Program-made: the position numbers and the translations under genes
Shown here: in pieces, positions 11,861 to 50,256 of the stretch
How positions within the stretch are numbered: the stretch's first letter is position 1
Layout of the letters: each line of letters starts with the position of its first letter
NCBI GenBank assembly: GCA_964187785.1
Contig: OZ076410.1
Location: 86,490,001 to 86,554,000 of the forward strand
From: Amphiscolops sp. MND2022
Taxonomy: Eukaryota
Length of the DNA stretch: 64,000 bases
Direction of reading: 5' to 3'
Notes under the pieces: model-generated
Databases searched by the model: none
The model's input: the letters and a program-made list of their open reading frames with translations, nothing else
Told to the model about the DNA's origin: nothing

Positions 11861-13026
11861 TGAATTTTCAAAACTTCTTCATTCTTGGTTCAAAAACCCG
11901 CCACTGTTTGTTCACAACTCATTGACAAACTTTTAGAATAATTCTTCAACTCAAAAAGTTTTCAACTTTGAACAACTTATGCTGAAGAACACATACTTTT
12001 CAAACGAGCTGATGGCAGATACGAAAATTCACAAATAGTAGGAAACAAGTTGTCAATAAAAACTTGAACAAAAATGTCAGTCATTCCAAACTGAAAATTT
12101 TGCCTCAATTTGAAGTCAAATCGTCAAAGGTTGTTCTCACTCCCTAAGTAAGATACACTTCTAGAACAGGACTTATTTCACCTTTAGGTTTAGTATATGG
12201 AACAGTTCATTAGTTTTTATGAACAAAGTTTTTTTCCAAATTTGTCATCTGTGATGAACAAGTGTGTTTTGAATTTGACCATTTTTGACGTTAGTAGCGA
12301 GTACCAGGCTGAAGGGTGAGCTTCCTGGGACCAATTTAATTGACCAATCAGCTTTGAGCGCTAATATGCTAAGCAAGCTGTGTAGCCGTCTCCAGCATTT
12401 CACCAGTCGACTGAAGTTGAGACGACCTCCTAGTCACTCGACTAAATTACTAAATTATCTGAAAGTATTTAGTTGTTTAATACAATGTGTGATGTAAACT
12501 CCGGCCTAGAAGCGGTCTAAAAGGAATTACAATGAGTAAAAAGGTAATGACGATGATGTTTTGTTGCTATTTTAATTTTTGATGATTTTAAAGACTGAGT
12601 CAACAGCCAAAGCAGCATACGGAAATTATTCATTTGAGTCAATTGCTGGAACAATCTACTAGCAAATGTGAATAATCACGAACGGTAAACGTGCTAATGT
12701 ATTGTAAACTGCAATTTTGTACGAATGATTGAGTGCCGTTGCGGTATATTATATTGTAATGATATTAATCTAACTTCTTTAAAATTCTGAAATCAGTTTG
12801 GAATGACTGACATTTTTGTTCAAGTTTTTAATGACAACTTGTTTCCTACTATTTGTGAATTTTCGTATCTGCCATCAGCTCGTTTGAAAAGTATGTGTTC
12901 ATCAGCATAAGTTGTTCAAAGTTGAAAACTTTTTGAGTTGAAGAATTATTCTAAATGTTTGTCAATGAGTTGTGAACAAACAGTGGCGGGTTTTTGAACC
13001 AAGAGTGAAGAAGTTTAGAAAATTCA
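11861..13026. repeat. Long inverted repeat: 234-bp arms (11861-12094 / 12793-13026), 698-bp spacer
   Basis: The arms are reverse complements with about 5 mismatches seen. Outer ends are TG...CA. No TSD found. Confidence 0.9.
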
Positions 13027-14793
13027 CAGTGAGCATTGTGGACATTCTAAATAGTGAGCTGCCTGGGACACCGCATCCGAGTTCCAGTCGATTGAAGCTA
13101 AGGCAACAGAAGAACAATTAAATACATTCCTATAATTGAGTACTTTAGTCGAGTGACTGGGCGGCCGTCCCAGATTCAGTCGACTGGTAAGCGTCCTGTT
13201 CGTAATACACATTCAGGAGCCAAATTGAAAACAAACAATTGTTACAAGCATATTTTGATCACTAGAGATGGGCGACAACCGGCTGAGCCGCTGCCGCTGT
13301 TAACAATACAAGGTTATTAACCATTCTAAGAGCTATGGAAGCATAGTTTGGAGGTGTTTTTTACTAACGGTATGTACCATTTTTTTCAATCAAAGTCAAT
13401 CTGTTAATACGGCGTAAGCAAATCCAACTTTTGTTAATACTGTTGTAGAGGTTAATTACTCAAAACTTGTGCTTGCCTCATTTCAGTTGCTTTTATGATT
13501 GCATGATATGCATTCGTAATTATTTAGATTTGCTGGGAGACTGTCCCAACAATTGACAACATCTGTAAAAGAAAGAAAAAGAATATAAAATTCGAACATT
13601 AAACGTCATCTCAAGGGCCCTGAAGTAGCCATTTGTGAAACCGCATCAAATATGGTTTCCGTCTTGAACTCGTTCTTCACTAGAAAAGACCATAACTTTC
13701 AAGTTGCAATCGCTGAAGCTTGTGAAGCTTTCAATAAATGCTGTCACATTTCGGGTACACTCAAAATCTAGAATTTTATGACCCACAGACGCATCAAGTC
13801 AATCCTCCACAATCGCATCCGTTTTGCTGAATGAAAAACATACTTACTTTCACTCTTATTGTTTCACTACTTGACTTTCTTTTTGATGATGATGTCTTTT
13901 TGATGATTGTAGTTGAACAAGTTGTTCACTTCCTTCAAACCTCCATACACGGGAAACTTTCTCTACTATGATGGACTTTCGTCTCATGCACTATCAACTC
14001 GTTTGGTCAACGCCATTCACCGTTCCTAACTGGTATTCTTCATCGAAACTCGACATCTACACCTTCAAACCCACTGGTCACTGGTCAATGGTCTTCTTGG
14101 TCACTGGTCATCTCTATCGTCAATGGACTTCTACATCTTCAAACCCACTGGTCACTGGTCTCCTACATCGTCACTGGTCTTCTACCTGTCACTGGTCAAC
14201 ACCCCGTTCCTTCGCTCCAGAAAAACACTCCCAGGAAGGAGCTTTAAACTGACTCTACAGTATTTCAAACAATAACTAATTTTTTTTACTTTTAAAACTT
14301 TTATTTCAATACATCCCCCATAACAGCCACAATTTGGACCCATTATAACTTTAATCATTCAACCGTGTACTCGTAGTTACTTATTAATAATTTTATAATG
14401 ATGTTGATCGTAGTCTATAACAATAGCCGCATGTTAATCTAGCAACCACAAAAATTGAAATCTTATTACCCAATGTATGTTAATTTGTAACATTTGCAAT
14501 GACAGAAATTGTACCTCTTAATAATCTTTCATTGTCATTGTGTAAAATTCGCAAATCATTCAATCCTCCATTGATAAACGTGCATAGTACAATATGATTC
14601 TACCTTCTTCTTACAGTACAAAAACCCTTCCTATGATACAAAATGTCTTCTGTCCAAATAACACGAAAACGTTCATTTTACTTTAGAGTACAACATCTTT
14701 TACAAAAGTTTGAAAAAAACTTCCAAGTAGAACAAATTCTTTGCTTCCTATTTGCTAGTCACTTCTGTTGAAAATAAACTCGAATTAGAATCT

Positions 14794-15959
14794 TGAATTT
14801 TCAAAACTTCTTCATTCTTGGTTCAAAAACCCGCCACTGTTTGTTCACAACTCATTGACAAACTTTTAGAATAATTCTTCAACTCAAAAAGTTTTCAACT
14901 TTGAACAACTTATGCTGAAGAACACATACTTTTCAAACGAGCTGATGGCAGATACGAAAATTCACAAATAGTAGGAAACAAGTTGTCAATAAAAACTTGA
15001 ACAAAAATGTTAGTCATTCCAAACTGAAAATTTTGCCTCAATTTGAAGTCAAATCGTCAAAGGTTGTTCTCACTCCCTAAGTAAGATACACTTCTAGAAC
15101 AGGACTTATTTCACCTTTAGGTTTAGTATATGGAACAGTTCATTAATTTTTATGAACAAAGTTTTTTTCCAAATTTGTTATCTGTGATGAACAAGTGTGT
15201 TTTGAATTTGACCATTTTTGACGTTAGTAGCGAGTACCAGGCTGAAGGGTGAGCTGCCTGGGACCAATTTAATTGACCAATCAGCTTTGAGCGCTAATAT
15301 GCTAAGCAAGCTGTGTAGCCGTCTCCAGCATTTCACCAGTCGACTGAAGTTGAGACGACCTCCTAGTCACTCGACTAAATTACTAAATTATCTGAAAGTA
15401 TTTAGTTGTTTAATACAATGTGTGATGTAAACTCCGGCCTAGAAGCGGTCTAAAAGGAATTACAATGAGTAAAAAGGTAATGACGATGATGTTTTGTTGC
15501 TATTTTAATTTTTGATGATTTTAAAGACTGAGTCAACAGTCAAAGCAGCATACGGAAATTATTCATTTGAGTCAATTGCTGGAACAATCTACTAGCAAAT
15601 GTGAATAATCACGAACGGTAAACGTGCTAATGTATTGTAATCTGCAATTTTGTACGAATGATTGAGTGCCGTTGCGGTATATTATATTGTAATGATATTA
15701 ATCTAACTTCTTTAAAATTCTGAAATCAGTTTGGAATGACTGACATTTTTGTTCAAGTTTTTAATGACAACTTGTTTCCTACTATTTGTGAATTTTCGTA
15801 TCTGCCATCAGCTCGTTTGAAAAGTATGTGTTCTTCAGCATAAGTTGTTCAAAGTTGAAAACTTTTTGAGTTGAAGAATTATTCTAAATGTTTGTCAATG
15901 AGTTGTGAACAAACAGTGGCGGGTTTTTGAACCAAGAGTGAAGAAGTTTAGAAAATTCA
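14794..15959. repeat. Second copy of the 234-bp-arm inverted repeat (inside the duplicated unit)
   Basis: Offset 2933 bp from 11861-13026. Confidence 0.9.
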
Positions 15960-18532
15960 CAGTGAGCATTGTGGACATTCTAAATAGTGAGCTGCCTGGG
16001 ACACCGCATCCGAGTTCCAGTCGACTGAAGCTAAGGCAACAGAAGAACAATTAAATACATTCCTATAATTGAGTACTTTAGTCGAGTGACTGGGCGGCCG
16101 TCCCAGACTCAGTCGACTGGTAAGCGTCCTGTTCGTAATACACATTCAGGCACCAAATTGAAAACAAACAATTGTTACAAGCATATTTTGATCACTAGAG
16201 ATGGGCGACAACCGGCTGAGCCGCCGCCGCTGTTAACAATACAACGTTATTAACCATTCTAAGAGCTATGGAAGCATAGTTTGGAGGTGTTTTTTACTAA
16301 CGGTATGTACCATTTTTTTCAATCAAAGTCAATCTGTTAATACGGCGTAAGCAAATCCAACTTTTGTTAATACTGTTGTAGAGGTTAATTACTCAAAACT
16401 TGTGCTTGCCTCATTTCAGTTGCTTTTATGATTGCATGATATGCATTCGTAATTATTTAGATTTGCTGGGAGACTGTCCCAACAATTGACTCAAACGAAG
16501 AATTTCCGTATGCTGCCTGGGAAGTTGACCCGGTCTTTAAAGTTAACAAAAATTAAAACAGCAACAAAACAACATCGTCATTAGCTTTTTTCTCATTTTG
16601 ATTGCTAATTAGACCTTTCTGGACCAAGGTTTACCTCTCACATTGTGTTAAACAACAACTAAACAATTTCACTTTATTGAGTGTTTTAGTCGAGTGACTG
16701 GGCGGTCGTCCCAGTTTCAGTTGACTTGTAAGCGTTGTATTTGTATTACATATCCAGGCGTCAAATTGAAAACAAGTTTTTGTTTTATGTATGTAGTAAT
16801 CACTAGAGCTGCGCGCAGTTGTTAACAATACAAGGTTTTTAATAACCATTCTAAGAGCGATGGAAGCATCGTTTGGAGTTGTTTTTACTCACTGTAAGTA
16901 TCGAATTTTTCCTCAATCAAATTCAAACTGTTGATACAGCGTAAACAAATCCAACTGTTATTAATACTGTGGTAGCTGTTAACTACTCAAAACTTTTGCT
17001 TCCCTCATTTCAGTTGTGTTTGTGCTAACATGATATGCATTCGTAATTGTTTAGACTTGCTGGTAGATTGTCCCAGCAATTGACCCAAACGAAGAAGTTT
17101 CAAATGTTGCCTGGGCCGTTGACTCCGGGGTTTACCTCGCACATTGTGTTAAACAACAACTAAATACTTTCACATGATTGAAAAAATTAGTCGAGTGACT
17201 GGGCGGTCGCCGCAGATTCAGTCAAATGGTAAGCGTCATATTTGTATTACATATTCAGGCATCAAATTGAAAAGAAACATTTGTTACATGTATATAGTGA
17301 TCACTAGAGCTGCGCGCCAGTAGCATGAGCTGCTGCCGCTGTTAACAATTAACAATAAAAGGTTATTAGTTACCAATCTAAGAGCAATGGAATCATCGTT
17401 TGGAGGTATTTTTACTGTCGATGTGTATCAAAAACTTTCCTCAATCAAATTCAAACTGTTAATACAGCGTGAACAAATCTAACTGTTATTAATACTGTGG
17501 TAACTGGTATCTACTCAAAACTTTGCTTGCCTCATTTCAGTGTTTGTGCTGACATGAGATGCAATCAAAATTATTTAGATTTGCTGGTAGATTTTTCCAG
17601 CAATTGACTCAAACGAAGATTTTCCGTATGTTGCCTGGGCCGTTGACTCAGTCTTTAAAAATATCAAAACTTGAAATAGCTACAAAACATCATCGTCATA
17701 AGCTTTTTAATTCATTGTGATTGTTTAATATACCTCTTCTGAGGCGGGGTTTACCCCGCACATATTAAACAACAATTAAATACATTCACATGATTGAGTA
17801 TGTTAGTCGAGTGACTCGGCGGTCGTCCCAGATTCATTTGAGAGGTAAGCGTCGTATCTGTAAGACAAATTCAGGCGTCAAATTGAAAACAAAAATTTGT
17901 TACATGTCTATATTGATCACTGAAGATGCGCGCCAATCGGATGAACCGCCGCCGCTGCTAACAATTCAAGGTTATCAATAACCATCATTACGATACATAT
18001 GCCGCAACGAACTTGCGAAATCTTGCTAGTTGGATTACCAGCCAATAGAAACGCGTTATTATTTCTGATACGCGTTACGAGTTTTGCTCGTTACACTGTG
18101 TGATTTGGCGTTACGCGTAGTGATCAAACTACAGCAAATGACTACTTTACTCTCTCTACAATTACGTACTTTGACTGGTTTCCACTTAATAGAATGATTC
18201 TAAGAGCGATGTAAACATTGTTTCGACTTCTTTTTACTTTCGGTGTGTACCAAAAATTTCCCTCAATCAAATTTAAACTGTTATTACAGCGTAAACAAAT
18301 CCAACTGTTTATTGTTCCAGCAATTGACTCAAACGGAGAATTTCCGTATGCTGCCTGGGCCGTTGACTCAGTCTTCAAAATTATGAAAAATTAAAAAAGC
18401 AACAAAACAACGTCGTCTTTAGCTTTTTACTCATTGTGATTGCTTATAAGACCTTACTGGGTCGGGGTTAACCTCGCACATTGTATCAAATAACAACTAA
18501 GTACTTTCAGATGATTGAGTATTTTAGTCGAG
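15960..18532. repeat. Degenerate ~500-620 bp satellite array; further monomers at 13027-13557 and inverted at ~12380-12680 and ~15310-15610
   Basis: Anchor TTAGTCGAGTGACT(G/C)GGCGG near 13146, 16079, 16687, 17188 and 17804, partial at 18524. Shared GTTAACAAT…ATTCTAAGAGC and CAATTGACTCAAACG…GCCTGGG blocks. Confidence 0.85.
17986..18198. other. About 210-bp unrelated insert within a satellite monomer
   Basis: Splits the monomer motif AACCAT|TCTAAGAGC. No clear TIR or TSD. Confidence 0.5.
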
Positions 18533-18847
18533 CTTTCACCAGATATTTCCCAGCCAAGCAACAAAAGCAGAGTTTCAACGCGTGCTTTTCATATCGTGCT
18601 TGACAATTCATCTTCACAAACTTTTCACATTCTCTCAAAGGGTCTTTACCGTCTTTCAATGGACACTCTTGACCAGTCTTCTTGTCGGTATTGTCATCCG
18701 CAATATTTGAGATCGACTAGTTCTTTGGCTTGTCTTTAATTGTCCATTTCGATTTGCCGGCAATGGGATTGCCCGTATTGAGAACGTCTTCCTGCACGGC
18801 CGCTAACTCTTGAATAACTCTTGAAACCATGTACTGAACACTTCCAG

Positions 18848-19974
18848 CACCATTACGGGGCCAAACAGGGAAATGTTCAAGTTTTCAAGAATCAAGAAAA
18901 GTAGTTGTTTAACGCAGCGAAGTGATTTTTTTTTCGATTCTTGAAATTCGAACTTCGAAGGAATTGTTTATGCCGCCTATAAAAGTCAAGAATTGAGAAA
19001 ACAATAGTGCGCAGGTATTTCCACTAGTTTCAAGAATCGAGAAAAAAACATTCGAGAATCTAGACACTAATTTTAATACATGGAGATAATGTATTAACAT
19101 CAGTTTGTCGATTCTCGAAATTTTGTCGATTCTTGAACATTTTGTCGATTCATGGAAATTTTCTTGATGATATTTATTTAAAATTGATAATGAAATTGCA
19201 ATGAAACTTTTAGGAAAATCGAGAACGAAATTTATTTAAAATTGAGAATCAAATTTTGTTGCACTGGTTTGTTGGGGGAATGGGTTCTGATTTGTTGATA
19301 AGCAGGTTTGTTCATCGATGCCATTCGTGGACAGTAATGTCTGCCAGCAAAACCTATAATGTGTGTTTCAAGAATGACGGACAAACAGATAGCTTGAAGT
19401 TGAAAAGGCCTTGCGTTTTGATCCCAAGCCAGTCCGCAAAGTCCCGGGCATTGGCCAAAGCAGTAGAAAGTCCAATCACGCGAACCTGAAAAAATGTTTG
19501 ATTCAAAATTGAGAATTCAATTAAAATTGGTGTAAAAAAGGATGATATTTATATAAAATTGAGAATGAAATTGTTTTAAAACTGAGCATCAAATTTCAAT
19601 AACATGAAAAAGAATGGAATTTAGTATGATTAGATTAGCAAAGAATTGATGAAAAATTTTGAAGAATTGACAAATATTTTTCAAGAATTCATATAATTTT
19701 TAAGAATCAACGTAAAATTCGAGAATTGAGAAAGATTCAAGAATCGAGAAAAACAGTTTCTAGCTGTTTTTCTCGGTTCTTGAAACTTTTCGCGTTTCTT
19801 CCATGCTATGCATTATTTTTTTTTTCAAGAATCGAGAAAACTCCCCAATTGCTTTCGCTTAGCTTTTCTCGATTCTTGAAATTTGTATGTATTACCATTA
19901 GTTCAAGTATTCAAAAATTACTACAACGAAATCGTTGTAGTTCACGTTTTTCCTACTTTGGCCTCGTAATGGTG
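18848..19974. mobile_element. Non-autonomous TIR DNA element (1127 bp, CAC...GTG termini) inserted in BEL gag, carrying a host exon
   Basis: Left CACCATTACGGGGCCAAA versus reverse complement of right CACCATTACGAGGCCAAA (17/18). Subterminal hairpins built from TTCAAGAATCGAGAAAA. The BEL reading (…NANYYM|LEVFSTWFQELAAVQEDVL) resumes across it. TSD not clear. Confidence 0.8.
19262..19485 (-). pseudogene. ASCC3: Captured exon fragment of ASCC3 (Ski2-like helicase, C-terminal cassette), one 1-nt deletion
   Basis: Manual translation [35 protein letters not shown](P,-1nt)[39 protein letters not shown] matches the ASCC3 motifs [14 protein letters not shown] and [12 protein letters not shown] as I recall them, not SNRNP200. 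Preceded by acceptor CATTTTTTCAG. Confidence 0.9.
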
Positions 19975-21924
19975 ACCATGTAGTAGTTAGCATTTTGTCT
20001 CTTGTAAGTCAATCATTTCGTCTTGATGTTCGATGACAGCATTCTTGTCGCACAACTCAGAACGCATTCTGACTGCAAGTCTCCAACATTTTTCATCTGC
20101 GTCGGAACTTGTACACAACTTGAAACTACTCTCGAGTATTTGACCAATGATACAGAGTTGTACGCTTCCACGGGTGGAAAGGTGTAAATTCGTCTCAGTT
20201 GTGCGTTAACTACACAAAGCGCGCACACAAGTCATTCGAAGCAACATCATACATGTCTGCAGTGTATCCTAGTCCAGCTATTACTGCTTTTGCTTACACA
20301 GTGACCAGCGTTTTGAGGTGGTTCATCTTTAAACTGGTGTCAATGTTCGCAGCGTGTGCACTCGAAAGGAACAAGCCTGACCACTCACGCCATTCCTGAG
20401 AATTCTGTCAGCTTCAGTTTCTGTAGGCTGCTTCATTTCTTGTTGCCGCCAACTGACTCTGAATAGAGGCAGAGTAGTTAGCTGAGGATGCCACTGGTGG
20501 CGGCAATATACTTTTTCTCGTCTGGTTACTACTACCATGGTTGGTTTGGAGGCGCGAAGCTCTCAAACTGGAAGCACACGTTGTTGCACTGTCTTATTCA
20601 TGTGCATCTTCGCTGATGCAGCCTTTGGCGCGAATCGACTTGCCCCCGTACCATCCTGAACATTAGTCGGCGGCGCCATTTTATCAGCCAGGTGGGGCAT
20701 TTGTGTTGTTTGTGACAATGGGTCAGGTTGTGGTTGAATGGGTCTACTGTCCAACGCATTCCTGGCTAACTCACTGCCCTTCTTCGCTGCTTTGCTCTCG
20801 TAGTTGATCTGATCTAACCACGACGGAACTTTCTCAAGGGGATCGCTCTGGACGGTTATTGGAGAGACACTCCAAAAACTTGTGCTTGCCCGACTGCTGC
20901 CCGCTCGAGACAATTCTATTTCTTTTTCTGAGATTCATAAGTCTCTTGCCTTCTCCTCTTAGAGCTTAGCAATTTCGAGTTATTCTGTGAGTTTATCCAA
21001 ATCCTCGTGTTTCTTTCGGATCACTGCATGACGTTTCTTTGCAGCTAATTGTTCATCAATTTCTTCTTGTTTCTTCAATCCTTCTTGTTCTAGGAGCATC
21101 ACTTGCTTTGTAGTAGATGACTTTGAACAAACTGATGTTCTGTTGCTTTTGGTTCGAGGACGTTGTGAATGTGAGCACAGTCCTCCTATTGGCAGTGATT
21201 TAGGCACGCTTCTTGGCTCTTGGTAGTGGTCCGATTTCTGATCCTCTCGCTCCTTTTGTCCGCTTTTGCGGGACTTATCTGCTGTGGAGTTCAGACGAAC
21301 GTCTGCTAGTCTTTGTTCAGCGTCTCCCAGGCTTCGTAAAAGAAGTCGCGCGTTTATAAAAGTTAGCAGGGCTTCCACTTTTGTTTTGACATCGGACCTC
21401 TTTTTCGTGGACGTCTCTGCCGTTTGCGATTCATTATCCCGCAATTTTTCGTTGCTAACCATTTTTTTCATCATTTCTTCGCTTCCAGATCCAAATAGAT
21501 GTGAATCTTATTTTTGTCTTGCATTGCTGACATCAGCATTTTCAAGTGTCCAATGTCAGTGTTTCGTTGCTACAAGACCTCAAATTTGCTCTGAATTTCT
21601 CTGTTCCCTTGTGTGAACGCTTTGGGGATCTGAGGTTGATAAGAAGCCTTTATTGCATTTTGAACTGCCTGTATGAGACGCTCTCGGGTCTGAGCGGTGT
21701 CTTTTCTCCACAACAGTAATTCAGCTATTTGCTTGGTCATCATGGTCGTCATACAGGTTCTCGTCAATTTCTTTGATCGACTTACCATGATCGACAGCCG
21801 CATTCCAATAACTCAAAACTTGAGTTTTATCTGCTGAGTTCTACAAAAAGTTTTCAATTTTGTTGGGATCAAAACTTTTGGGTGCTGCCATCTTCTCACT
21901 TTGCAGTGGATCTCAATCTCCACA

Positions 21925-22110: not shown

Positions 22111-22581
22111 TCCACTTTGCAGCACACACAGGTTCGTATGATTCACCAACAGTCGTCGTTCACTGTACAGGTTCACCTGTTGAAACAGTACTTTTCTGAC
22201 TGTGTACCAATTCAATTAGATGATCATCCAGTTGTCCGCCCAATTGATGATGTCCGCCAAAATGATGGTGTCCGCCACAAAAGTGAAGATGTCCAGGTCG
22301 GCTTACCAAAAGTAACGGCTGCTTGATCCCTTCTCTCAACCAAACGTTACGCCGCCCTGAATTCGGTGCTCGGCAATGCGGATCGTTACCGAACACTGCT
22401 TGCTTTTTAGATTAAAAGGACTGTATCTTGACTTAGTAGAATCCAATGATCCCGAATTGCACTTTTTGGTTGTCTCCTAACACGTCCAAATCTCCACAAG
22501 ATGAAGGTAACTAAGTTAGTCGCCCTTAGTCTTTGGCGAAAAGTCGAAAATTGGTGAAAAAATGAATTGAGAATTGATGTA

Positions 22582-22594
22582 GTCCGGAGACCCA
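22582..22594 (-). promoter_or_regulatory. BEL primer-binding site (TGGGTCTCCGGAC)
   Basis: Begins 3 nt after the CA end of the LTR. Decayed copy near 27447-27459. Confidence 0.5.
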
Positions 22595-22597
22595 TTT

Positions 22598-22794
22598 TGG
22601 CTATAGGTATTCAGTCGTTAAAATCCCTAACTAGTGATGGTATAATTCTGGTTACAATTCAACAGTAAATATACATCGAAATGTGTTGTATAACTAAATG
22701 ACATTTAAAGCATAATATGAAGGTATTGGCTAAGTAAACAAACAATGTGGTGGTTTTGGCATGTTAGTCAGGTGGGCTAGATAGTATGTTTACA
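22598..22794 (-). mobile_element. BEL 5' LTR (197 bp); duplicate at ~27463-27659
   Basis: On the minus strand it starts TGTAAAC and ends …TATAGCCA, adjacent to the PBS. Confidence 0.6.
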
Positions 22795-23309
22795 CAATAT
22801 AATTGATATTGATTTCAACAGAGTTACATTACCTTCAAGGTTATATGAGAAAATCACATAATAACTTGTATGGCAAAAACCGGTTTTCATGGGGTCCGTC
22901 CTAAATCACTTTGGGTTTTAATTGCTCGGAACCCAGGGGAGATACGGGGTAGGGTGTTTCAAGTGAAAAGTTAGGGTAACACCACTACTATATGTGTGTT
23001 AAGTTTCGAGGTGATTGAATGTGTGGTTCATCCGGACGGGGGTTGGCCAATTTTTGAGATGCCCTATTTCTGGTGAAACTTATAAAGTTTCCAACTTAAA
23101 TCTTGACAATTTTTCGAAGTGTTTTGAGTTATCATAGTTTTATCACAACTCCTAATAATCACCTTTAAATAATCCTCTCAATCACTTGTTTTCATCCTCT
23201 CTTCTTTTTCCACTGCCAATACGTACTTCATAAACTCCTCCGTGGTTTTCACCCACTTCATATTGAATATTCTATACTCCCTGATATAAACTTAGACCAA
23301 CTTTGGGTA

Positions 23310-25520
23310 ATGTTTTACACTGACCGCCACTCAAAACTACTGACCAACCTTCTCCTCTACTCCCACTTCCTTCTTTCTGATGATACTGATCATCGTCTGA
23401 ACACCGCTCAAATTTTCAGAAAAAGCCCTAAAAATCTTATCTATAACGAAACTGTTCCTCTTCGGTTTGAAACAAACACTGAAGATATTTATACAAAACC
23501 TCTCATACGTGAACATCACGACTCAAACTTTTACTACATTTACACACGCTCCTTAGCTGAAACTGCTGGTGAACACTCTTTTTCAATTCTTTTCACTTCT
23601 CTTCTTAATCCAAAAGGAACGTTTCGGAAAAACTTATCTGACTTTCTAATAATTTTATTCATATAGCTCATGTTTTCACCTCCTTTTTGTGCTTCCCAAT
23701 TTTGAACAAGTTCGAACTATTGAAGATAATCATCATCATTGTCTCATTACTGGTATTCTTCAAATTCACAACTTCCATTACCAATTCTTCCAAAACCTTA
23801 TCTTAAATAGAAACACCAAAGAACAAATTGGAATATACTCTCACTTTCTTAGAAACTATTTCGACATAACTACAAACTTGTTTGGGACTCCAGGTTCACT
23901 TGACGCTTGTATTAATTTCCCATTACAATTTTTTCAAGATGAGTTCCTACCTTTTCTTGCTACCTCTGACAATCGTCATCCTCATTTCTATAATCTTCTT
24001 GACTTCCCTGTTGCTCGTTTTACCCATCTCACAATTGATAATCATAGTATTGATAAAAGTCTTGCACTTCATCCATCTGTTAGACCATATGCAAAACATA
24101 CTCCACAACTTCCTTCTATTGACACTACTTCTGATGTTTCTTTACAAACTCATCCTTCCTCCTGTAATGTTTTAGTATATACTCACAAGAATGGTAATAC
24201 TCCTCCAAAGATTAATCCTCTCCTCCTCATTCTTTCAATAACCCCATTACTACTCAACCTTTAAATTCTCAATCACCACACCAATATAAAACTCCTTCTA
24301 ACACCCCTACCACAAATGCTATTACTACCCAACCCTTTATATCTCAAATTCATCAAACTATCCTCTATCTTCTTTCAACCCCCTACTCTCCCACCTAACC
24401 CTCTCACACCAACTACTTCTACCTTCCCTTTTCTTTCACCTTCTTCTCAACATACTTCGTCAGATTTTTAAATTACTCCATCTGTTTCTTTTGCCGTTCT
24501 CTCTGATCGCATCAAACGTTTTGATGGTTTATGTCACACTTGCATTCGTGAAGCGTTTTTAGCTCACCTCACGCGTAACTAATCAACTTGGACCTCAACC
24601 CCTTGATATTCAATCATATTTAACATGGCACTCAGGACGTATGTCTCTTCTTTGATAATCCCTCACAGAAACTGCTGCTAATAATTATGATCGCATTCCC
24701 CAAGTTTACAAAATTGATTGGTCTTTTTACCTCCAAGTTTCAAAAACAATTCTTTTCTCGAAAACATGCAAACCATGCTCAACTGGAAGCCCTTTCCCGT
24801 GATAAAAATATAAACTTCATTTTGAAAAATATTGTTCCTTTTGCCATAAAATATATCACACTGTTTCCACTTGTCATCGTAGACTCACTATGCCTAAAGA
24901 ATTTAAACCTCAATCAAAATCACCTACTCCCTCTTTCTATCAACATTTTAAAACACCGTCCAATAAATATAATCTTCAAAGTCCGCGTTATCGTAGTCGT
25001 AGTATCCACTATCGATAATTCTCTGCGAATCTCAATATAAACCTTGTTCTCAATCACGCTAAAATTTTCGTTCATAATATCCTTAAAAACACTCTCCTAT
25101 GAAATATACTCTTGTATGAGCGTAACCGACCTCGCTATATCCAAGAATATAGAAAATCTTCTTCACGAACATATGATCCTTCTCGCTCATTTTACAATTC
25201 TATATCCTCTCGTTGCCCATATAAAAATTACCCTCGTTCTCGTGAACGCTTCTCTAGTTGTAAAATCTCCTCTTTTAGACGATACAAATCATCATATAGT
25301 TCTCCTTCTAAATCACGTACTGATCGCTATAGAAGTCGATCAGACTCAAAGTCTAAAAACTACTCCAACTATTATTACAAACCCACTGTTAATCTCACTC
25401 AACAACCAACTTCACTAATTCACAGTCCCCCTCCTCAGAATCTAAATCCGAAATTAATATTATCACCCAAACCTCTCTTCCTGGTCACAATTTTCTACTC
25501 TTTCAACTATTCTTGCTAAT
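23310..25520 (+). pseudogene. gag: Gypsy B gag (fragmented), including RS-rich segment 25112..25519
   Basis: ILQIHNFHYQFFQNLILN is homologous to gypsy A ILQIKQFQYRLFQSIILN. RIKRFDGL…FLAHL capsid start, KFQKQFFSRKHANHAQLEALS, and YERNRPRY…RSRSDSKS. Confidence 0.8.
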
Positions 25521-26596
25521 GCTATCACTCCTTCTACATTGTTTCTTGTTCTATATATTTTCAAGTCACCTGAAGACGCCTCTTTACCCTCTAAATTAGA
25601 GTTTTTATTCCTGCTGGACAGCGGTGCCTGCATTTGTGAGTTATTTTTATCAACTTTTACAAATTTAGTGGATCACTTTCTTAAATGTTCAAAATCCACT
25701 CCCGAAAACAATGATTTCAAAACTTTAACTGTTGCCTTTAAGGCGGAAGTTCCTATATCATTTAATATGATTCTAACACTCCATACTTCCATCCAGGGCA
25801 GTACTCGCACACTTGTCATCCCGTTTACAATATTCTTCGAACTCCTATGAAATATACTCTTGTATGAGCGTAACCGACCTCGCTATATCCAAGAATATAG
25901 AAAATCTTCTTCACGAACATATGATCCTTCTCGCTCATTTTACAATTCTATATCCTCTCGTTGCCCATATAAAAATTACCCTCGTTCTCGTGAACGCTTC
26001 TCTAGTTGTAAAATCTCCTCTTTTAGACGATACAAATCATCATATAGTTCTCCTTCTAAATCACGTACTGATCGCTATAGAAGTCGATCAGACTCAAAGT
26101 CTAAAAACTACTCCAACTATTATTACAAACCCACTGTTAATCTCACTCAACAACCAACTTCACTAATTCACAGTCCCCCTCCTCAGAATCTAAATCCGAA
26201 ATTAATATTATCACCCAAACCTCTCTTCCTGGTCACAATTTTCTACTCTTTCAACTATTCTTGCTAATGCTATCACTCCTTCTACATTGTTTCTTGTTCT
26301 ATATATTTTCAAGTCACCTGAAGACGCCTCTTTACCCTCTAAATTAGAGTTTTTATTCCTGCTGGACAGCGGTGCCTGCATTTGTGAGTTATTTTTATCA
26401 ACTTTTACAAATTTAGTGGATCACTTTCTTAAATGTTCAAAATCCACTCCCGAAAACAATGATTTCAAAACTTTAACTGTTGCCTTTAAGGCGGAAGTTC
26501 CTATATCATTTAATATGATTCTAACACTCCATACTTCCATCCAGGGCAGTACTCGCACACTTGTCATCCCGTTTACAATATTCTTCGAACTCCTAT
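25094..26596. repeat. 748-bp tandem duplication (RS domain + protease)
   Basis: CTCCTAT at 25094, 25842 and 26590 is a 7-nt junction microhomology. The translated ORFs are identical between copies. Confidence 0.95.
25539..25850 (+). pseudogene. pol: Gypsy B aspartic protease with intact DSG (duplicate 26287..26604)
   Basis: EFLFLLDSGACI. Confidence 0.85.
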
Positions 26597-28923
26597 TTTT
26601 ATAAAATATGTAAATCCGCTCAAAATTGAACACATGTCTCTTCCATTTAATACATCACGTGACTCTCACGTCAATACCTTTCCTTCTACTGGGCTCACCA
26701 AAATTCTACCCTTAGTTCTCTTACATTTACACAATCAAATTTGAGAAGAAAATTAATTTAAACACAACGTTTCTCAAGTTATCCACTTTCCAATTCAAGC
26801 GACCCTTCCTTTAATTTTCAAAACTTCTGAGAATGAAATTATATTTCGTTCATTTCCACATCCATATTTTAACACTCGCTTTTACTCTACTTTTAACTTA
26901 TTCCAAGTTTTCCAAAAAACTAAAACTGAACCCAACGGTTGTTCTGTTATATTTCAACAGATTACTCATCACTCTGCCATCCTCAGGATACATTGGCTAT
27001 GTTGACGATGCTGCCACTAAAATTATACCACTACACTATAAAGTTAAATATGATAACTCTCTAATCCATACTGTAATTCATTCATACTATCCAGATCTCT
27101 CAGAACCCAAACGTCATATTCATAGTTCCTCACTCCAAAAAAAACAATATTGCAATGCTACTCATCGTAACGATGTTGGTAAAAGAGCCCTACCTTTTGG
27201 AATTCGCTTCAAACCTAATGCTAAACTCCAAACTTAAATGTCCACTAAAGTAACCGAACACTGCTTGCTTTTTAGATTAAAAGGACTGTATCTTGACTTA
27301 GTAGAATCCACTGATCCCGAATTGCACTTTTTGGTTGTCTCCTAACACGTCCAAATCTCCACAAGATGAGAGTAACTAACTTAGTCGCCCTTAGTCTTTG
27401 GCGAAAAGTCGAAAAGAGGTGAAGAAATGAATTGAGAATTGATGTAGTCCTGAGACCCTTTTTGGCTATAGGTATTCAGTCGTTAAAATCCTTATCTAGT
27501 GATGGTATAATTCTGGTTACAATTCAACAGTAAATATACATCGAAATGTGTTGTAAAACTAAATGACATTGAAAGCATAATATGAAGGTATTGACTAAGT
27601 AAACAAACAATGTGGTGGTTTTGGCATGTTAGTCAGGTGGGCTAGATAGTATGTTTACACAATGTAATTATTATTGATTTCAACAGAGTTACATTTCCTT
27701 CAAGGTCATATGAGAAAATCACATAATAACGTGTATGGCAAAAACGGGTTTTCATGGGGTCCGTCCTAGGTCACTTTGGGTGTTAATTGCTCGGAACCCA
27801 GGGGAGATACGGGGTAGGGTGTTTCTAGTGAAACGTTAGGGTAACACCACTACTATATATGTGTTAAGTTTCGAAGTGATTGAATGTGTGGTTCATCCGA
27901 ACGGGGGTTGGCCAATTTTTGGGATGCCCTATTTCTGGTGAAACTTATAAAGTTTCAAACTTAAATCTTGACATTTTTTCGAAGTGTTTTGAGTTATCAT
28001 AGCTTTATCACAACTCCTAATAATCACCTTTAAATAATCCTCTCAATCACTTGTTTTCATCCTCTCTTCTTTTTCCACTGCCAATACGTACTTCATAAAC
28101 TCCTCCGTGGTTTTCACCCACTTCATATTGAATATTCTATACTCCCTGATATAAACTTAGACCGACTTTGGGTAATGTTTTACACTGACCGCCACTCAAA
28201 ACTACTGACCAACCTTCTCCTCTACTCCCACTTCCTTCTTTCTGATGATACTGATCATCGTCTGAACACCGCTCAAATTTTCAGAAAAATGCCTAAAAAT
28301 CTTATCTATAACGAAACTGTTCTTCTTCGGTTTGAAACAAACACTGAAGATATTTATACAATACCTCTCATACGTGAACATCACGACTCAAACTTTTACT
28401 ACATTCACACACACTCCTTAGCCAAAACTGCTGGTGAACACTCTTTTTCAATTCTTTTCACTTCTCTTCTTAATCCAAATGGAACGTTTCTGAAAAGCAT
28501 CTGTCTTTCTAATAATTATATTCATATAGCTCATGTTTTCACCTCCTTTTTGTGCTTCCCAATTTTGAACAAGTTCGAACTGTTGAAGATAATCATCATA
28601 TTGTCTCACTACTGGTAGTCTTCAAATTCACAACTTCCAATGCCAATTCTTTCAAAACTTTATCTTAAATAGAGACACCAAAGAACAAGTTGGAAAATAC
28701 TCTCACTTTCTTAGAAACTATTTCGACATAACTACAAACTTGTTTGGGACTCCAAATTCCCTTGACGCTTGTATTAATTTCCCATCACAATTTTCTCAAG
28801 ATGAGTTCCTGCTTTTTCTTGCTACCTCTGACAATCGTCATCCTCATTTCTATAATCTTCTTGACTTCCCTGTTGCTCGTTTTACCCATGTCACAATTGA
28901 TAATCATAGTATTGATAAAAGTC

Positions 28924-31900
28924 TTGCACTTCATCCATCTGGTAGACCATATGCAAAACATACTCCTCAACTTCCTTCTATTGACACTACTTCTGATGTT
29001 TCTTTACAAACTCATCCTTCCTCCTGTAATGTTTTAGTATATACTCACAAGATTGGTAATACTCCTTCTAACACTCCTACCACAAATGCTATTACTACCC
29101 AACCCTCTAAATCTCAAATTCATCAAACTATCCTCTATCTTCTTTTCAACCCCCTACTCTCCCTCCTAACCCTCTCACACCAACTACTTCCACCTTCCCT
29201 TTTCTTCCATCTTCTTCTCAACATACTTCGTCAGATTTTTAAATGACTCCATCTGTTCCTTTTGCCGTTCTCTCTGATCGCATCAAACGATTTGATGGTT
29301 TATATCACACTTACATTCGTGAATCGTTTTTAGCTCACCTCACGCGTAACTATTCAACTTGGACCTCAACCCCTTGATATTCAATGATATTTAACATGGC
29401 ACTCAGGACGTATGTCTCTTCTTTAATAACTCCTCACAGGAACTGCCGCTAATAATTATGATCGCATTCCCCAAGTTTAAAAAAACGATTGGTCTTTTTA
29501 CCTCCAAGTTTCAAAAACAATTCCTTTCTCAAAAACATGCAAACCATGCTCAACTGGAAGCCCTTTCCCGTGATAAAAATATAAACTTCAATTTGAAAAA
29601 TATTTTTCATTTTGCCATAAAAAATATCACACTGTTTCCACTTGTCATCGTAGACTCACTATGCTTAAAGAATTTAAACCTCAGTCAAAATCACCTACTC
29701 CCTCTTTCTATCAACATTTTAAAACACCGTCCAATAAATATAATCCTCAAAGTCCGCGTTATCGTAGTCGTAGTATCCACTATCGATAATTCTCTGCGAA
29801 TCTCAATATAAACCTTGTTCTCAATCACGCTAAAATTTTCGTTCATAATATCCTTATAAACACTCTCCTATGAAATATACTCTTGTATGAGCGTAACCGA
29901 CCTCGCTATATCCAAGAATATAGAAAATCTTCTTCACGAACATATGATCCTTCTCGCTCATATTACAATTCTATATCCTCTCGTTGCCCATATAAAAATT
30001 ACCCTCGTTCTCGTGAACGCTTCTCTAGTTGTAAAATCTCCTCTTTTAGACGATACAAATCACCATATAGTTCTCCTTCTAAATCTCGTACTGATCGCTA
30101 TAGAAGTCGATCAGACTCAAAGTCTAAAAATTACTCCAACTATTATTACAAACCCACTGTTAATCTCACTCAACAACCAACTTCACTAATTCACAGTCCC
30201 CCTCCACAGAATCTAAATCCGAAATTAATATTATCACCCAAACCTCTCTTCCTGATCACAAATTTCTACTCTTTCAACTATTCTTGCTAATGCTATCACT
30301 CCTTCTACAATGTTTCTTGTTCTATATATTTGTGAGTTATTTTTATCCACTTTCACAAATTTAGTGGATCACTTTCTTAAATGTTCAAAATCCACTCCCG
30401 AAAACAATGATTTCAAAACTTTAACCGTTGCCTTCAAGGCTGAAGTTCCTGTATCATTTAATATGATTCTCACACTCCATACTTCCATCCAGGGCAGTAC
30501 TCGCACACTTGTAATCCCGTTTACAATATTCTTCGAACTCCTATTTTTAAAAAATATGTAAAATCGCTCAAAATTGAACACATGTCTCTTCCATTTAATA
30601 CATCACGTGACTCTCACGTCAATACATTTCCTTCTACTGGGCTCACCAAAATTGTACCCTTAGTTCTCTTTTATTTACACAATCAAATTTGGGAAGAAAT
30701 TAAATTTAAACACAACGTTTCTCAAGTTATCCACTTTCCAATTCTTGCACTTCATCCATCTGGTAGACCATATGCAAAACATACTCCTCAACTTCCTTCT
30801 ATTGACACTACTTCTGATGGTGCTTTACAAACTCATCCTTCCTCCTGTAATGTTTTAGTATATACTCACAAGATTGGTAATACTCCTTCTAACACTCCTA
30901 CCACAAATGCTATTACTACCCAACCCTCTATATCTCAAATTCATCAAACTATCCTCTATCTTCTTTTCAACCCCCTACTCTCCCTCCTAACCCTCTCACA
31001 CCAACTACTTCCACCTTCCCTTTTCTTCCACCTTCTTCTCAACATACTTCGTCAGATTTTTAAATGACTCCATCTGTTCCTTTTGCCGTTCTCTCTGATC
31101 GCATCAAACGATTTGATGGTTTATATCACACTTACATTCATGAATCGTTTTTAGCTCACCTCACGCGTAACTATTCAACTTCGACCCCAACCCCTTGATA
31201 TTCAATGATATTTAACATGGCACTCAGGACGTATGTCTCTTCTTTAATAACTCCTCACAGGAACTGCCGCTAATAATTATGATCGCATTCCCCAAGTTTA
31301 AAAAAACGATTGGTCTTTTTACCTCCAAGTTTCAAAAACAATTCCTTTCTCAAAAACATGCAAACCATGCTCAACTGGAAGCCCTTTCCCGTGATAAAAA
31401 TATGAACTTCAATTTGAAAAATAATTTTCATTTTGCCATAAAAAATATCACACTGTTTCCACTTGTCATCGTAGACTCACTATGCTTAAAGAATTTAAAC
31501 CTCAATCAAAATCACCTACTCCCTCTTTCTATCAACATTTTAAAACACCGTCCAATAAATATAATCCTCAAAGTCCGCGTTATCGTAGTCGTAGTATCCA
31601 CTATCGATAATTCTCTGCGAATCTCAATATAAACCTTGTTCTCAATCACGCTAAAATTTTCGTTCATAATATCCTTATAAACACTCTCCTATGAAATATA
31701 CTCTTGTATGAGCGTAACCGACCTCGCTATATCCAAGAATATAGAAAATCTTCTTCACGAACATATGATCCTTCTCGCTCATATTACAATTCTATATCCT
31801 CTCGTTGCCCATATAAAAATTACCCTCGTTCTCGTGAACGCTTCTCTAGTTGTAAAATCTCCTCTTTTAGACGATACAAATCACCATATAGTTCTCCTTC

Positions 31901-34387: not shown

Positions 34388-34739
34388 AAGCGACCCTTCC
34401 CTCAATTTTCAAAACTTCTGAGAATGAAATTCTATTTCGTTCATTTCCACATTCATATTTTAACACTCGCTTTAACTCTACTTTTAACTTCCTCCAAGTT
34501 TACCAAAAAACTAAAACTGAACCCAACGGTTGTTCTGTTATATTTCAACAGATTACTCATCACTCTGCCATCCTCTCACCAAGATACATTGGCTATGTTG
34601 AAGATGCTGCCACTAAAATTATACCACTACACTATAAAGATAAATATGATAACTCTCTAATCCATACTGTAATTCATTCATACTATCCAGATCTCTCAGA
34701 ACCCAAACGTCATATTCATAGTTCCTCACCCCAAAAAAC

Positions 34740-49200: not shown

Positions 49201-50256
49201 AAGCAGGGCGCTAAAAGTTGGTATGAGGAGTTAGCGAACTTACTCATAAATCAAAAATTTTGCCGTAGCAAAAATCACCACTGTCTTTTCATTAAAAAAC
49301 AAGACAAAAGAAAGTTGTATGTTCTAAGTTGGGTAGATGATCTAGTGATAGCAGGTAGCAACGATGGGGACATGAAAGAGTTAAAAAACTCTTGAAAGAA
49401 AATTCAAGATGGACGATCGATGAAAACTCGAATGGTTCCGAGGCATGCAAATAAGTCAGGGAAAAGACAAAATATCTCTTGACCAGGAAACATGTTTTGA
49501 AAGCGTCATAGAGAAATTTAGCATGCGAGTTAGCAATCCTTCGAAAACGCCAGCAGAGAACAACTTGAGAGTAGTTAAGTCCTTTGAGAGTGAAGCATCG
49601 GTTAATGAGAGGATCTACAGAAGTTTGGTAGGCTCCTTACTATAAATAGTCAAGCAAACTAGGCCAGATATAGTTTGGATGGTCAATGTGCTCTCTCGAT
49701 TCATGGACAAACCAACTAACACTCACTGACTGGCAAACGTGTCCTCCGCTATCTTCAAGCCACGAAGTCACTCAAACTGGTCTACTCACGAGACAGTGAC
49801 TCCAATCTACATGGAGAAAGTGATGCAGACTGGAGTGGCGACCATGATGACAGACGTTTGACCACTGGCTACTTTTTCAAGCTTGGATCAAGTGGGGGAG
49901 CAGTAAGCTGGCAAACTAAGAAGCAGCAGGCAGTGGCACTATCATCATGTGGAGCAGGACATCAAGGTCTAGCTGCTGCAGTGCAAGAAGCATCTTTCTT
50001 GCGATCACTCTTGTATGAAGTGGGCTATGAGCAATCACATCCAATCATCATTGGGGAAGACAATCAGAGTTGCATCAAGTTGGCAACTAACCCTGTGATG
50101 CACGAGCGATCAAAACATATTGATACGAAGTTTCACTTCATACGGGAGAAAGTTGATGACAATTCAATTCAACTAGTCTATACGCCAACTGATCATCTGG
50201 CAAAAGATCTGTTGACAAAAGAACATCCACAAGTTAAAGTGGAGTTAATTGCGTAA
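46253..50256 (+). pseudogene. Copia-2 gag-pol
   Basis: DGHKAWGRLQERFRS (gag). LVVDSRSTDHV (PR, DSG changed to DSR). SDLVGP, FIDE, FDNGT and EQNGVAER (IN). QMDVKSAYL and SWVDDL (RT). SDADWSGD and GEDNQSCI (RH). Confidence 0.92.

What the first reader, a model, noticed from the sequence alone, without database searches (positions are those of the whole stretch)
18848..19974. Pack-type TIR transposon carrying a captured ASCC3 helicase exon with its splice acceptor
Seen: an 1127-bp element with 17/18-nt CAC...GTG inverted termini splits BEL gag. In its middle (19262-19485, minus strand) lie 75 codons reading [20 protein letters not shown]…[17 protein letters not shown]…HSPNKPV, preceded by CATTTTTTCAG, with one 1-nt deletion. 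The ORF track misses it. Known: these motifs belong to the C-terminal helicase cassette of ASCC3 (ribosome quality control and ALKBH3-linked dealkylation repair); gene capture by non-autonomous DNA transposons (Pack-MULE, Pack-CACTA, Pack-TIR) is common in plants but much less often reported in animals. Inference: the retained acceptor points to DNA-level capture, and the element moved after capture. It could spread an exon trap or produce small RNAs against host ASCC3.
Basis: partly seen in the sequence, partly recalled or inferred. Interest (0 to 1): 0.8.

Follow-up and report, generated by a model that had tools for sequence, protein, structure and literature searches.

The report
Mobile DNA transposon carrying one ASCC3 exon
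A 1.1-kb non-autonomous DNA transposon picked up one complete exon of the host-type helicase gene ASCC3, then copied itself to at least three places in this animal genome; the exon now decays as a passenger, so this is a new example of a known and, in animals, rare phenomenon.

Summary
Window 18848-19974 is bounded by a 26-nt imperfect inverted repeat, 17/18 at the tips. Each arm holds an array of a 17-nt motif. On the minus strand at 19485-19262 lies a 75-codon block whose best matches are the C-terminal helicase cassette of ASCC3, broken by one 1-nt deletion.

New evidence:
- The window is 100% identical to a contig of ENA assembly ERZ25074608. That assembly holds two more copies of the element at unrelated loci, L001 and L002.
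- All three copies share the same exon/transposon junction, so there was one capture followed by transposition.
- L001 keeps the exon open. L002 is truncated inside it.
- The block starts and ends at intron positions seen in other eukaryotes' ASCC3 genes. It is edged by T6CAG and GTG, so it is one whole phase-0/0 exon taken from unspliced DNA.
- No other ASCC3 part lies in the 64 kb.
- All 10 codon differences between two copies are non-synonymous, which indicates neutral decay.
- An 8-bp target duplication (ACCATGTA) is likely, but 14 extra bases sit at one end.

Not shown: the host's parent ASCC3 locus, the transposon superfamily, the "BEL gag" identity of the flanks (no Pfam hit), and any function.

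Verdict: a real multicopy Pack-TIR, a new member of a known kind.

The parts
18826..18833 (.). Probable target-site duplication, copy 1 (ACCATGTA)
   Evidence: It has the same 8-mer as 19975-19982. The background rate of such a match within 30 nt of an end is 0.11%.
18834..18847 (.). 14-nt filler (CTGAACACTTCCAG) between the TSD copy and the left TIR. Origin unknown: flank carried over from a donor site, or repair filler.
   Evidence: It is unique in the window and absent from the paralogous copies. The L001 flank at the same end differs.
18848..18873 (+). Left terminal inverted repeat
   Evidence: (I6). Homology with L001 starts at this end.
18884..19156 (.). Left subterminal array: 7 copies, in both orientations, of the 17-nt motif TTCAAGAATCGAGAAAA (putative transposase-binding sites)
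   Evidence: 12 of the 17 window matches lie in the element, against 0.82 expected for the whole window. See also (D2, D4).
19163..19256 (-). R2, the downstream copy of a ~90-nt direct repeat that brackets the captured exon
   Evidence: Local alignment score 61 against 20.8 +/- 3.3 (maximum 33) for shuffles.
19262..19485 (-). Captured ASCC3 exon. It has 74 codons (VRVIGL...SPNKP) plus GTG, with a 1-nt deletion near 19380-19381. GC is 46% against 29% for the rest of the element.
19486..19507 (-). Upstream tail of at most 22 nt ending in TTTTTTCAG (3' splice-site form), conserved in all three copies
19509..19596 (-). R1, the upstream copy of the ~90-nt direct repeat
   Evidence: (D1, D3).
19718..19880 (.). 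Right subterminal array: 5 copies of the 17-nt motif
19921..19940 (.). 20-nt palindrome CTACAACGAAATCGTTGTAG next to the right TIR, invariant in all three copies
19949..19974 (-). Right terminal inverted repeat
   Evidence: Homology with L001 and L002 ends here.
19975..19982 (.). Probable target-site duplication, copy 2 (ACCATGTA)
18510..18845 (-). Downstream flank: stop-free pieces of a decayed retroelement-like ORF, including a Cys-rich CFCCLAGKY stretch. BEL/Pao gag identity is not confirmed.
   Evidence: No Pfam hit.
19990..21507 (-). Upstream flank: stop-free pieces of the same decayed ORF region. The 164-aa ORF at 20983-21474 served to locate the window in ENA ERZ25074608.
   Evidence: No Pfam hit.

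Best explanation
Window 18848-19974 is one copy of a low-copy family of non-autonomous, TIR-bounded DNA transposons of unresolved superfamily. An ancestor of the family acquired, once, a roughly 250-nt piece of unspliced genomic DNA. That piece holds exactly one phase-0/0 exon of an ASCC3 gene (the C-terminal helicase cassette) with only a few bases of intron on each side.

The piece sits in the A/T-rich middle of the element between two copies of a ~90-nt direct repeat. [quoted passage not shown]

A transposase supplied in trans, presumably recognising the TIRs and the 17-nt subterminal motifs, then moved the chimeric element to at least three loci of this genome. The window copy landed in a decayed retroelement ORF. 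It probably made an 8-bp target duplication and gained 14 extra bases at one end.

The exon now has no coding role and decays neutrally.

Shown: the anatomy, the ASCC3 identity, multiple copies with one shared junction, the coincidence with intron positions, and the absence of a resident ASCC3 gene.

Inferred: the capture mechanism, the 8-bp TSD, trans-mobilisation, and neutrality of the passenger.
For: - TIRs are real and unique in the window.
- Subterminal motif arrays sit only in the two arms: 12 of 17 window matches against 0.82 expected.
- ASCC3 identity: E 1e-13 and 1.5e-14 to adjacent residues of human ASCC3, ahead of SLH1 and BRR2; E 4.5e-16 against 1.84 billion proteins.
- Only this one ASCC3 segment is in the window.
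- Same genome: L008 from ENA ERZ25074608 is 100% identical to window 31474-10980.
- Paralogues come from the same assembly. L001 is 90-93% identical across both arms and the exon, with a nested 4.4-kb insertion. L002 is 85-89% identical, is truncated 16 nt into the exon, and lies in an intron next to a FYVE exon.
- The exon/element junction is identical in all three copies.
- The L001 exon is an intact reading frame, P0158.
- Intron positions at both edges occur in other species' ASCC3 genes.
- Exon GC is 46% against 29% for the rest of the element. There are 13 substitutions and 1 indel between W and L001. All 10 differing codons are non-synonymous.
- A ~90-nt direct repeat brackets the exon.
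- The 8-mer ACCATGTA flanks the insertion, with a background rate of 0.11%. The flanking stop-free pieces 20016-20231 and 18720-18845 have the same codon phase. This fits an inserted length of 1127+14+8 = 1149 = 3 x 383 and does not fit 1127 (coordinates).
- Pack-TIRs are documented in animals, and multicopy ones are rare: 4 of 281 unique cases (PMC8277862).
Against: - The parent ASCC3 locus of this genome was not found. The closest real ASCC3 sequences retrieved are only 66-79% identical in protein. In-genome origin and the intron tail are therefore unverified.
- No exon-less relative and no autonomous partner were found, so the superfamily and the pre-capture state are unknown.
- The TSD is seen at one copy only and is offset by 14 nt. 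L001 shows no TSD and L002 is truncated.
- The terminal 2-3 nt differ among copies.
- Both capture breakpoints lie within 22 nt or less and 8 nt or less of the exon edges. Random DNA-level capture does not explain that.
- The copy search was indirect, through called ORFs, so copy number is a lower bound.
Confidence: 0.85

Rival explanations
1. The exon was captured in another species, and the chimeric transposon reached this genome by horizontal transfer. On this view the host's own ASCC3 is not the parent.
For: No close parent (over 80% protein identity) turned up in three homology searches, although ORFs of this very assembly are in the database. DNA transposons are known to transfer horizontally (general knowledge).
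Against: The searches only see called ORFs of 0.55-1.75 times the query length, so a host exon called differently would be missed. The copies differ by 6-14% and would be expected to have drifted from the parent as well. No foreign copy was found either; the JGI metagenome scan was empty.
Confidence: 0.08
2. The ASCC3 block was acquired from spliced RNA or cDNA rather than from genomic DNA.
For: The block is almost exactly an exon, with very little flanking non-coding DNA: 22 nt or less upstream and 8 nt or less downstream.
Against: A cDNA piece would run on into the neighbouring exons, but similarity stops dead at both edges. The upstream residues match ASCC3 only at chance level and belong to the element's own repeat. 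Downstream, the translation reads QQNLILNFK where ASCC3 has LIFVSSRRQ. The edges carry AG| and |GT at positions that are introns in other species.
Confidence: 0.04
3. The exon is a functional cargo. It could be a splice-competent cassette that is exonised into host genes when the element lands in introns, or a source of small RNAs against ASCC3.
For: The exon is symmetric (phase 0/0), carries acceptor-like and donor-like edges, and is intact in L001. One copy, L002, sits in an intron of a FYVE/SARA-type gene. A share of animal Pack-TIRs are transcribed as chimeras (PMC8277862).
Against: All 10 codon differences between two copies are non-synonymous. W has a frameshift and L002 has lost nearly all of the exon. 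The donor GTGCAA is weak. In L002 the exon remnant is antisense to the host gene. No expression data are available.
Confidence: 0.06
4. The block is a genuine exon of a resident ASCC3 gene or pseudogene, and the inverted repeats are incidental.
For: It has good splice-site-like edges and high similarity to ASCC3.
Against: No other ASCC3 segment lies in the 64 kb. The same block, with the same flanks and TIRs, occurs at two unrelated loci. It carries a frameshift.
Confidence: 0.01

Closest known systems
Pack-TIRs of animals (Tan et al. 2021, Nat Commun 12:4280, PMC8277862), e.g. Pack-hAT-N8_XT of Xenopus tropicalis carrying 291 bp of CAPSL, and Ssk-FB4 of Drosophila
   Same: A non-autonomous TIR element has a short host-gene fragment in its interior. 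The fragment is multicopy at unlinked loci, is more GC-rich than the element, and includes exonic sequence. Capture is best explained by template switching.
   Different: The parent locus is not identified here, so their criterion of a unique parent at 90% identity or more is untested. The superfamily is unresolved. The cargo is precisely one whole symmetric exon with both splice-site edges and almost no intron. The host is an unidentified metazoan outside their 100 genomes as far as I can tell.
Pack-MULEs, Pack-CACTA and Pack-TYPE elements of plants
   Same: The same principle of transduplication of gene fragments between TIRs, followed by amplification.
   Different: Plant elements are typed by Mutator or CACTA termini with 9-10-bp or 3-bp TSDs and often carry several fragments. 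Here the termini are CACC..., the likely TSD is 8 bp, and there is a single fragment.
ASCC3 / Slh1 (Ski2-like tandem-cassette helicase)
   Same: The 75 residues align without gaps, apart from the frameshift, to the C-terminal cassette (8alz_B residues 1088-1162).
   Different: This is only about 3% of the protein. It has no start or continuation, carries a frameshift in the window copy, and evolves neutrally. It is a fragment, not a gene.
hAT and P superfamily non-autonomous elements
   Same: Short TIRs, dense subterminal repeats in both orientations, and a likely 8-bp target duplication.
   Different: The termini do not fit the hAT YARNG rule (here CACCA). No transposase relative was found. 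The TSD rests on one offset case.

Membership tests
Pack-TIR (transduplicating TIR transposon) | Two terminal inverted repeats of one element family bound the unit | tested here: met
   The TIR is 26 nt and 85% complementary, 17/18 at the tips. The same termini bound the L001 copy and the intact end of L002.
Pack-TIR (transduplicating TIR transposon) | Internal segment of 100-5000 bp derived from a non-TE host gene | tested here: met
   A 224-nt block matches ASCC3 at E 1e-13 to 1e-16. Its GC is 46% against 29% for the rest of the element.
Pack-TIR (transduplicating TIR transposon) | Unique parental copy elsewhere in the same genome at 90% identity or more, not flanked by TEs (criteria of PMC8277862) | not testable with these tools
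   The host assembly (ENA ERZ25074608) cannot be searched by DNA here. ORF-based searches found no close parent.
Pack-TIR (transduplicating TIR transposon) | Not a retrocopy: carries intron or splice-site sequence, or stops at exon borders | tested here: met
   The edges are T6CAG| and |GTG. They fall at intron positions seen in L003 and L004. There is no adjoining-exon sequence.
Pack-TIR (transduplicating TIR transposon) | Mobilised after capture (multicopy with a shared breakpoint) | tested here: met
   Three loci of one genome share the identical exon/element junction.
Pack-TIR (transduplicating TIR transposon) | Target-site duplication | tested here: inconclusive
   The 8-mer ACCATGTA flanks the window copy but sits 14 nt off the left TIR. 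None is seen at L001, and L002 is truncated.
hAT superfamily | 8-bp TSD | tested here: inconclusive
   One offset 8-bp repeat.
hAT superfamily | Termini fitting 5'-YARNG (rule recalled from the literature, not retrieved here) | tested here: not met
   The termini read CACCA / TGGTG.
hAT superfamily | Related autonomous element encoding a hAT transposase | tested here: not met
   No transposase domain was found in the element or in the long L001 version; there are only weak C2H2-like fingers inside a nested TE. The genome-wide search was not possible.
CACTA/EnSpm and Transib (CAC... termini) | 3-bp (CACTA) or 5-bp (Transib) TSD directly abutting the TIRs | tested here: not met
   The flanks are CAG/ACC and TCCAG/ACCAT, which do not match.
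Functional ASCC3 gene | Collinear set of ASCC3 exons with an intact reading frame | tested here: not met
   A single segment in 64 kb with a frameshift.
BEL/Pao gag (Pfam DUF1759) as the insertion target | Match to the family profile | tested here: not met
   No Pfam hit for any of 12 stop-free pieces, even at E up to 10. Only my own by-eye motif reading suggests a gag. No pol lies downstream, where other repeats begin at about 18532.

The most novel reading that the evidence does not exclude
The family is a mobile exon cassette. It carries a complete, symmetric (phase 0/0) exon with both splice-site edges on an active transposon. Intact copies landing in phase-0 introns could then be spliced into host mRNAs, which would be transposon-driven exon shuffling caught in progress. 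The near-exact trimming of the cargo to the exon would then reflect selection or a splice-site-linked capture mechanism rather than chance.
Probability: 0.07. Interest if true: 0.7.

Novelty: new member of a known kind. Interest (0 to 1): 0.4.

Why it matters
Gene-fragment capture by cut-and-paste transposons is well charted in plants and thinly documented in animals. The one broad survey found 370 Pack-TIRs in 100 genomes, and only four of them were multicopy.

This case adds a clearly mobilised example in another metazoan genome. It has three loci and one shared breakpoint. Its cargo is exactly one splice-site-bounded, frame-neutral exon, which is the kind of unit exon-shuffling models need.

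It also matters for annotation. Stray ASCC3-like ORFs such as P0158 in this genome are transposon cargo, not helicase genes.

There is no sign that the cargo is used.

Tried and rejected
- **Pfam on flanking pieces.** I scanned 12 flanking stop-free pieces for BEL/Pao gag and got no hit. 'BEL gag' is therefore left unconfirmed.
- **Non-coding RNA.** Rfam and tRNA scans of the window found nothing.
- **Exact look-ups of element ORFs.** These found no record or only the known contig, so there are no identical recent copies.
- **JGI metagenome scan.** A 22-mer invariant in all copies gave 0 hits. The genome is in ENA, not JGI.
- **Host ASCC3.** Three homology searches and one representative search failed to surface it. 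P0166 on a 374-kb contig looked promising but comes from a different assembly and organism and is only 71% identical.
- **Cluster look-up for organism names.** It gave only Entomophthora and Dicrocoelium ASCC3, which says nothing about the host.
- **Extra upstream similarity.** The match (ILNQT against ISSQT) that let some tblastn hits run to 19509 is rejected as chance. That stretch is a copy of the element's own repeat.
- **The 4.4 kb inside the L001 copy.** I considered an autonomous core or a second capture. It is better read as a nested TE with its own inverted subterminal motif TATTTCTAATCCATGAGC and weak C2H2-like fingers.
- **Superfamily from termini.** hAT, CACTA and Transib assignments fail on the termini or the TSD.
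- **Literature.** Searches for the ENA accession and for ASCC3 capture returned nothing relevant.

Full report
**1. The observation**

The sequence at 18848-19974 is as described.

- The repeat finder reports inverted arms at 18848-18873 and 19949-19974, 26 nt long and 85% complementary.
Shuffles give 0.04 expected.
- On the minus strand, 19485 downward reads [35 protein letters not shown]. After a 1-nt loss it reads [38 protein letters not shown].
- The block is preceded by CATTTTTTCAG.

I searched the two pieces apart. Each hits human ASCC3 (8alz_B) best, at adjacent residues 1088-1123 (E 1e-13) and 1125-1162 (E 1.5e-14). Yeast Slh1 and BRR2/SNRNP200 score clearly lower. Against 1.84 billion representative proteins the second piece gives 307 hits, the best at E 4.5e-16. 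Those I inspected are ASCC3-type helicases or fragments of them.

**2. Not a resident gene**

tblastn with 19 full-length ASCC3 proteins from that search finds only this one segment in the window. Everything else has E above 0.08. The few hits that extend eight residues upstream of VRV fall on a copy of the element's own internal repeat (D3), so I treat that similarity as chance.

**3. Anatomy of the element**

- Twelve of the 17 window matches to the motif TTCAAGAATCGAGAAAA (3 mismatches or fewer) lie inside the element, against 0.82 expected for the whole window.
- Seven of them lie at 18884-19156 and five at 19718-19880, in both orientations. None lies in the middle. This is the usual layout of subterminal transposase-binding sites.
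- A 20-nt palindrome sits next to the right TIR.
- The middle of the element is A/T-rich at 29% GC. The ASCC3 block is 46% GC.
- The block is bracketed by two collinear copies of a ~90-nt direct repeat, 19596-19509 and 19256-19163. The local alignment score is 61, against 20.8 +/- 3.3 (maximum 33) for shuffles.
- The foreign DNA is therefore at most 19257-19507: the exon, 22 nt or less upstream, and 8 nt or less downstream.

**4. Other copies, and the genome**

A search with the stop-free stretch over the exon found P0158, a 92-aa ORF that is 90% identical. It has the same non-ASCC3 head and tail but no frameshift. It lies on a 397-kb contig of ENA assembly ERZ25074608 (L001). A search with the ORF over the right arm found P0161 on a 378-kb contig of the same assembly (L002).

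The 164-aa ORF from the window's flank (20983-21474) is on a third contig of that assembly. That locus, L008, is 100% identical to window 31474-10980 over 20,495 nt. The window and the two extra copies therefore belong to one genome.

That genome is a metazoan's. L002 carries a FYVE exon (E 3e-20) and SARA_C exons. Coverage of the three contigs is alike: 98x, 103x and 106x (contig names).

- **L001** matches window 19972-19155 at 90% and 19168-18851 at 93%. In between it has 4.4 kb with its own inverted subterminal motif, 190-bp tandem repeats and weak C2H2-like fingers. I read this as a nested transposon.
- **L002** matches from the right TIR inward at 85-89%. It has a 540-bp insertion and is cut off 16 nt into the exon, 155 nt from the FYVE exon.

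In all three copies the junction ...TTTTTTCAG|GTTCG.GTGATTGGAC is the same. Homology with the surroundings ends at the TIRs. This is one capture followed by transposition, not segmental duplication.

**5. Which kind of capture**

I could not retrieve the host's own ASCC3. The homology tools see only called ORFs of similar length, and all three searches are spent. I compared the edges of the block with ASCC3 genes of other eukaryotes fetched as loci.

- In L003 a 113-nt GT...AG intron ends (...acgtag) immediately before VRVVGL, in phase 0.
- In L004 the exon ends AAGCCG|gtgtgt, directly after KP. In L005 an intron lies at or near KPV.

The window block begins ...TTTTTTCAG|GTT (V) and ends ...AAA CCA|GTG. 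It therefore equals one whole exon of 74 codons, phase 0 at both ends, with AG and GT just outside. A cDNA-derived piece would continue into neighbouring exons (LIFVSSRRQ follows KPV in real ASCC3), and this one does not.

- At most 22 nt can be intron.
- A T6 run also follows another unit of the element's repeat.
- Nothing explains why both breakpoints sit so close to the exon edges.

**6. State of the cargo**

W and L001 differ in the exon by 13 substitutions and one indel, 94.2% identity, against 89.7% in the right arm (19486-19974). All 10 differing codons are non-synonymous and none is synonymous. At most differing sites one copy or the other keeps the residue usual in real ASCC3 (my reading). 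With the frameshift in W and the truncation in L002, this is neutral decay of a passenger.

**7. Insertion site**

The 8-mer ACCATGTA directly follows the right TIR (19975-19982) and recurs at 18826-18833. It is separated from the left TIR by 14 nt, CTGAACACTTCCAG, which occur nowhere else in the window or in the paralogues. An 8-mer recurring within 30 nt of the other end has a background rate of 0.11% in this window.

The stop-free pieces on either side, 20016-20231 and 18720-18845, share the same codon phase. This fits an inserted length of 1127+14+8 = 1149 = 3 x 383 and does not fit 1127 (coordinates). I did not build the joined sequence.

I take an 8-bp TSD with a 14-nt filler as likely but not proven. 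L001 shows no TSD. Its other flank is a solo TIR-like end of a related element in inverted, abutting position.

That the target is BEL/Pao gag is unconfirmed. Twelve pieces give no Pfam hit even at E up to 10. By eye the pieces resemble a gag with a degenerate Cys knuckle. Unrelated repeats replace any pol from about 18532 leftward.

**8. Superfamily**

This is unresolved.

- CACCA termini do not fit the hAT YARNG rule.
- The 3-bp and 5-bp flanks exclude CACTA-type and Transib-type TSDs.
- An 8-bp TSD would fit hAT-like or P-like elements.
- No transposase was found.

**9. Comparison with what is known**

Tan et al. 2021 (PMC8277862) defined animal Pack-TIRs.

- They found 370 cases in 55 of 100 genomes, mostly hAT and Tc/mariner.
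- Only four of 281 unique cases were multicopy, plus Ssk-FB4 in flies.
- Exonic sources were enriched, and multicopy cases tended to capture GC-rich DNA.
- They proposed gap filling or FoSTeST template switching as the mechanism.

The present element fits that kind in structure, in multicopy behaviour and in its GC contrast. The R1/R2 duplication around the insert is compatible with template switching. Their criterion of a unique parent at 90% identity or more could not be tested.

I found no report of ASCC3 capture.

**10. Verdict**

This is a real, mobilised Pack-type TIR transposon carrying one complete ASCC3 exon. It is a new member of a known kind. Interest is moderate, because multicopy animal cases are few and the cargo is a clean, symmetric, splice-site-edged exon. 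No function is indicated.

Noticed in passing
window 22385-34400 (+): A tandem array of ~1.82-kb units with strong C-over-G skew on the + strand. It repeats a 135-aa ORF at 25112, 25860, 29883, 31704 and 33526. The units are 95-99% alike, and no Pfam domain was found.
   Followed up: partly
window 12400-18532: A family of ~220-790-nt repeats, 79-99% alike, in both orientations. It abuts and truncates the gag-like region at about 18532. It could be SINE-like or satellite-like. No tRNA or Rfam match was found.
   Followed up: partly
window 41766-43957 (-) and 46406-53023 (+): Copia-type retroelement remains: rve, SH3_retrovirus, Pol_BBD, zf-CCHC and Retrotran_gag_2. A 132-aa ORF is duplicated at 49858 and 52625.
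   Followed up: partly
window 62489-62688: A run of 200 N, an assembly gap or masked stretch.
   Followed up: no
L001 10344-14700: A nested ~4.4-kb element inside the paralogous copy. It has its own inverted subterminal motif TATTTCTAATCCATGAGC, 190-bp tandem repeats at 12247-13031, and an ORF at 11976-12293 with two sub-threshold C2H2-like fingers.
   Followed up: partly
L001 9497-9546: A solo TIR-like end (CCATTACGACGCCAA, minus strand) abuts the 5' TIR of the L001 copy head-to-head with a 7-11-nt spacer. It looks like the end of a related element, and no partner end lies within 9.5 kb.
   Followed up: partly
L001 20026-20279 (-): A called gene that runs off the locus end carries a precomputed Pfam hit to Monjiviricetes_fusion. 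It may be an endogenous fragment of a negative-strand RNA virus glycoprotein gene.
   Followed up: no
L002 8792-9004 (+), 16367-19800 (+): A host gene of the FYVE + SARA_C type (like ZFYVE9/16). The truncated transposon copy lies in its intron 155 nt past the FYVE exon, and the exon remnant is antisense to the gene.
   Followed up: partly
L002 9267-9802: A ~540-bp insertion inside the L002 copy that is absent from W and L001. Its nature was not determined.
   Followed up: no
P0001 (ENA, 159 aa): An ASCC3 fragment from another sample in which MNKPAFQAIQQHSPNKPTLIFVS occurs twice around the same exon region. It could be a local duplication or an assembly artefact in an unrelated organism.
   Followed up: no
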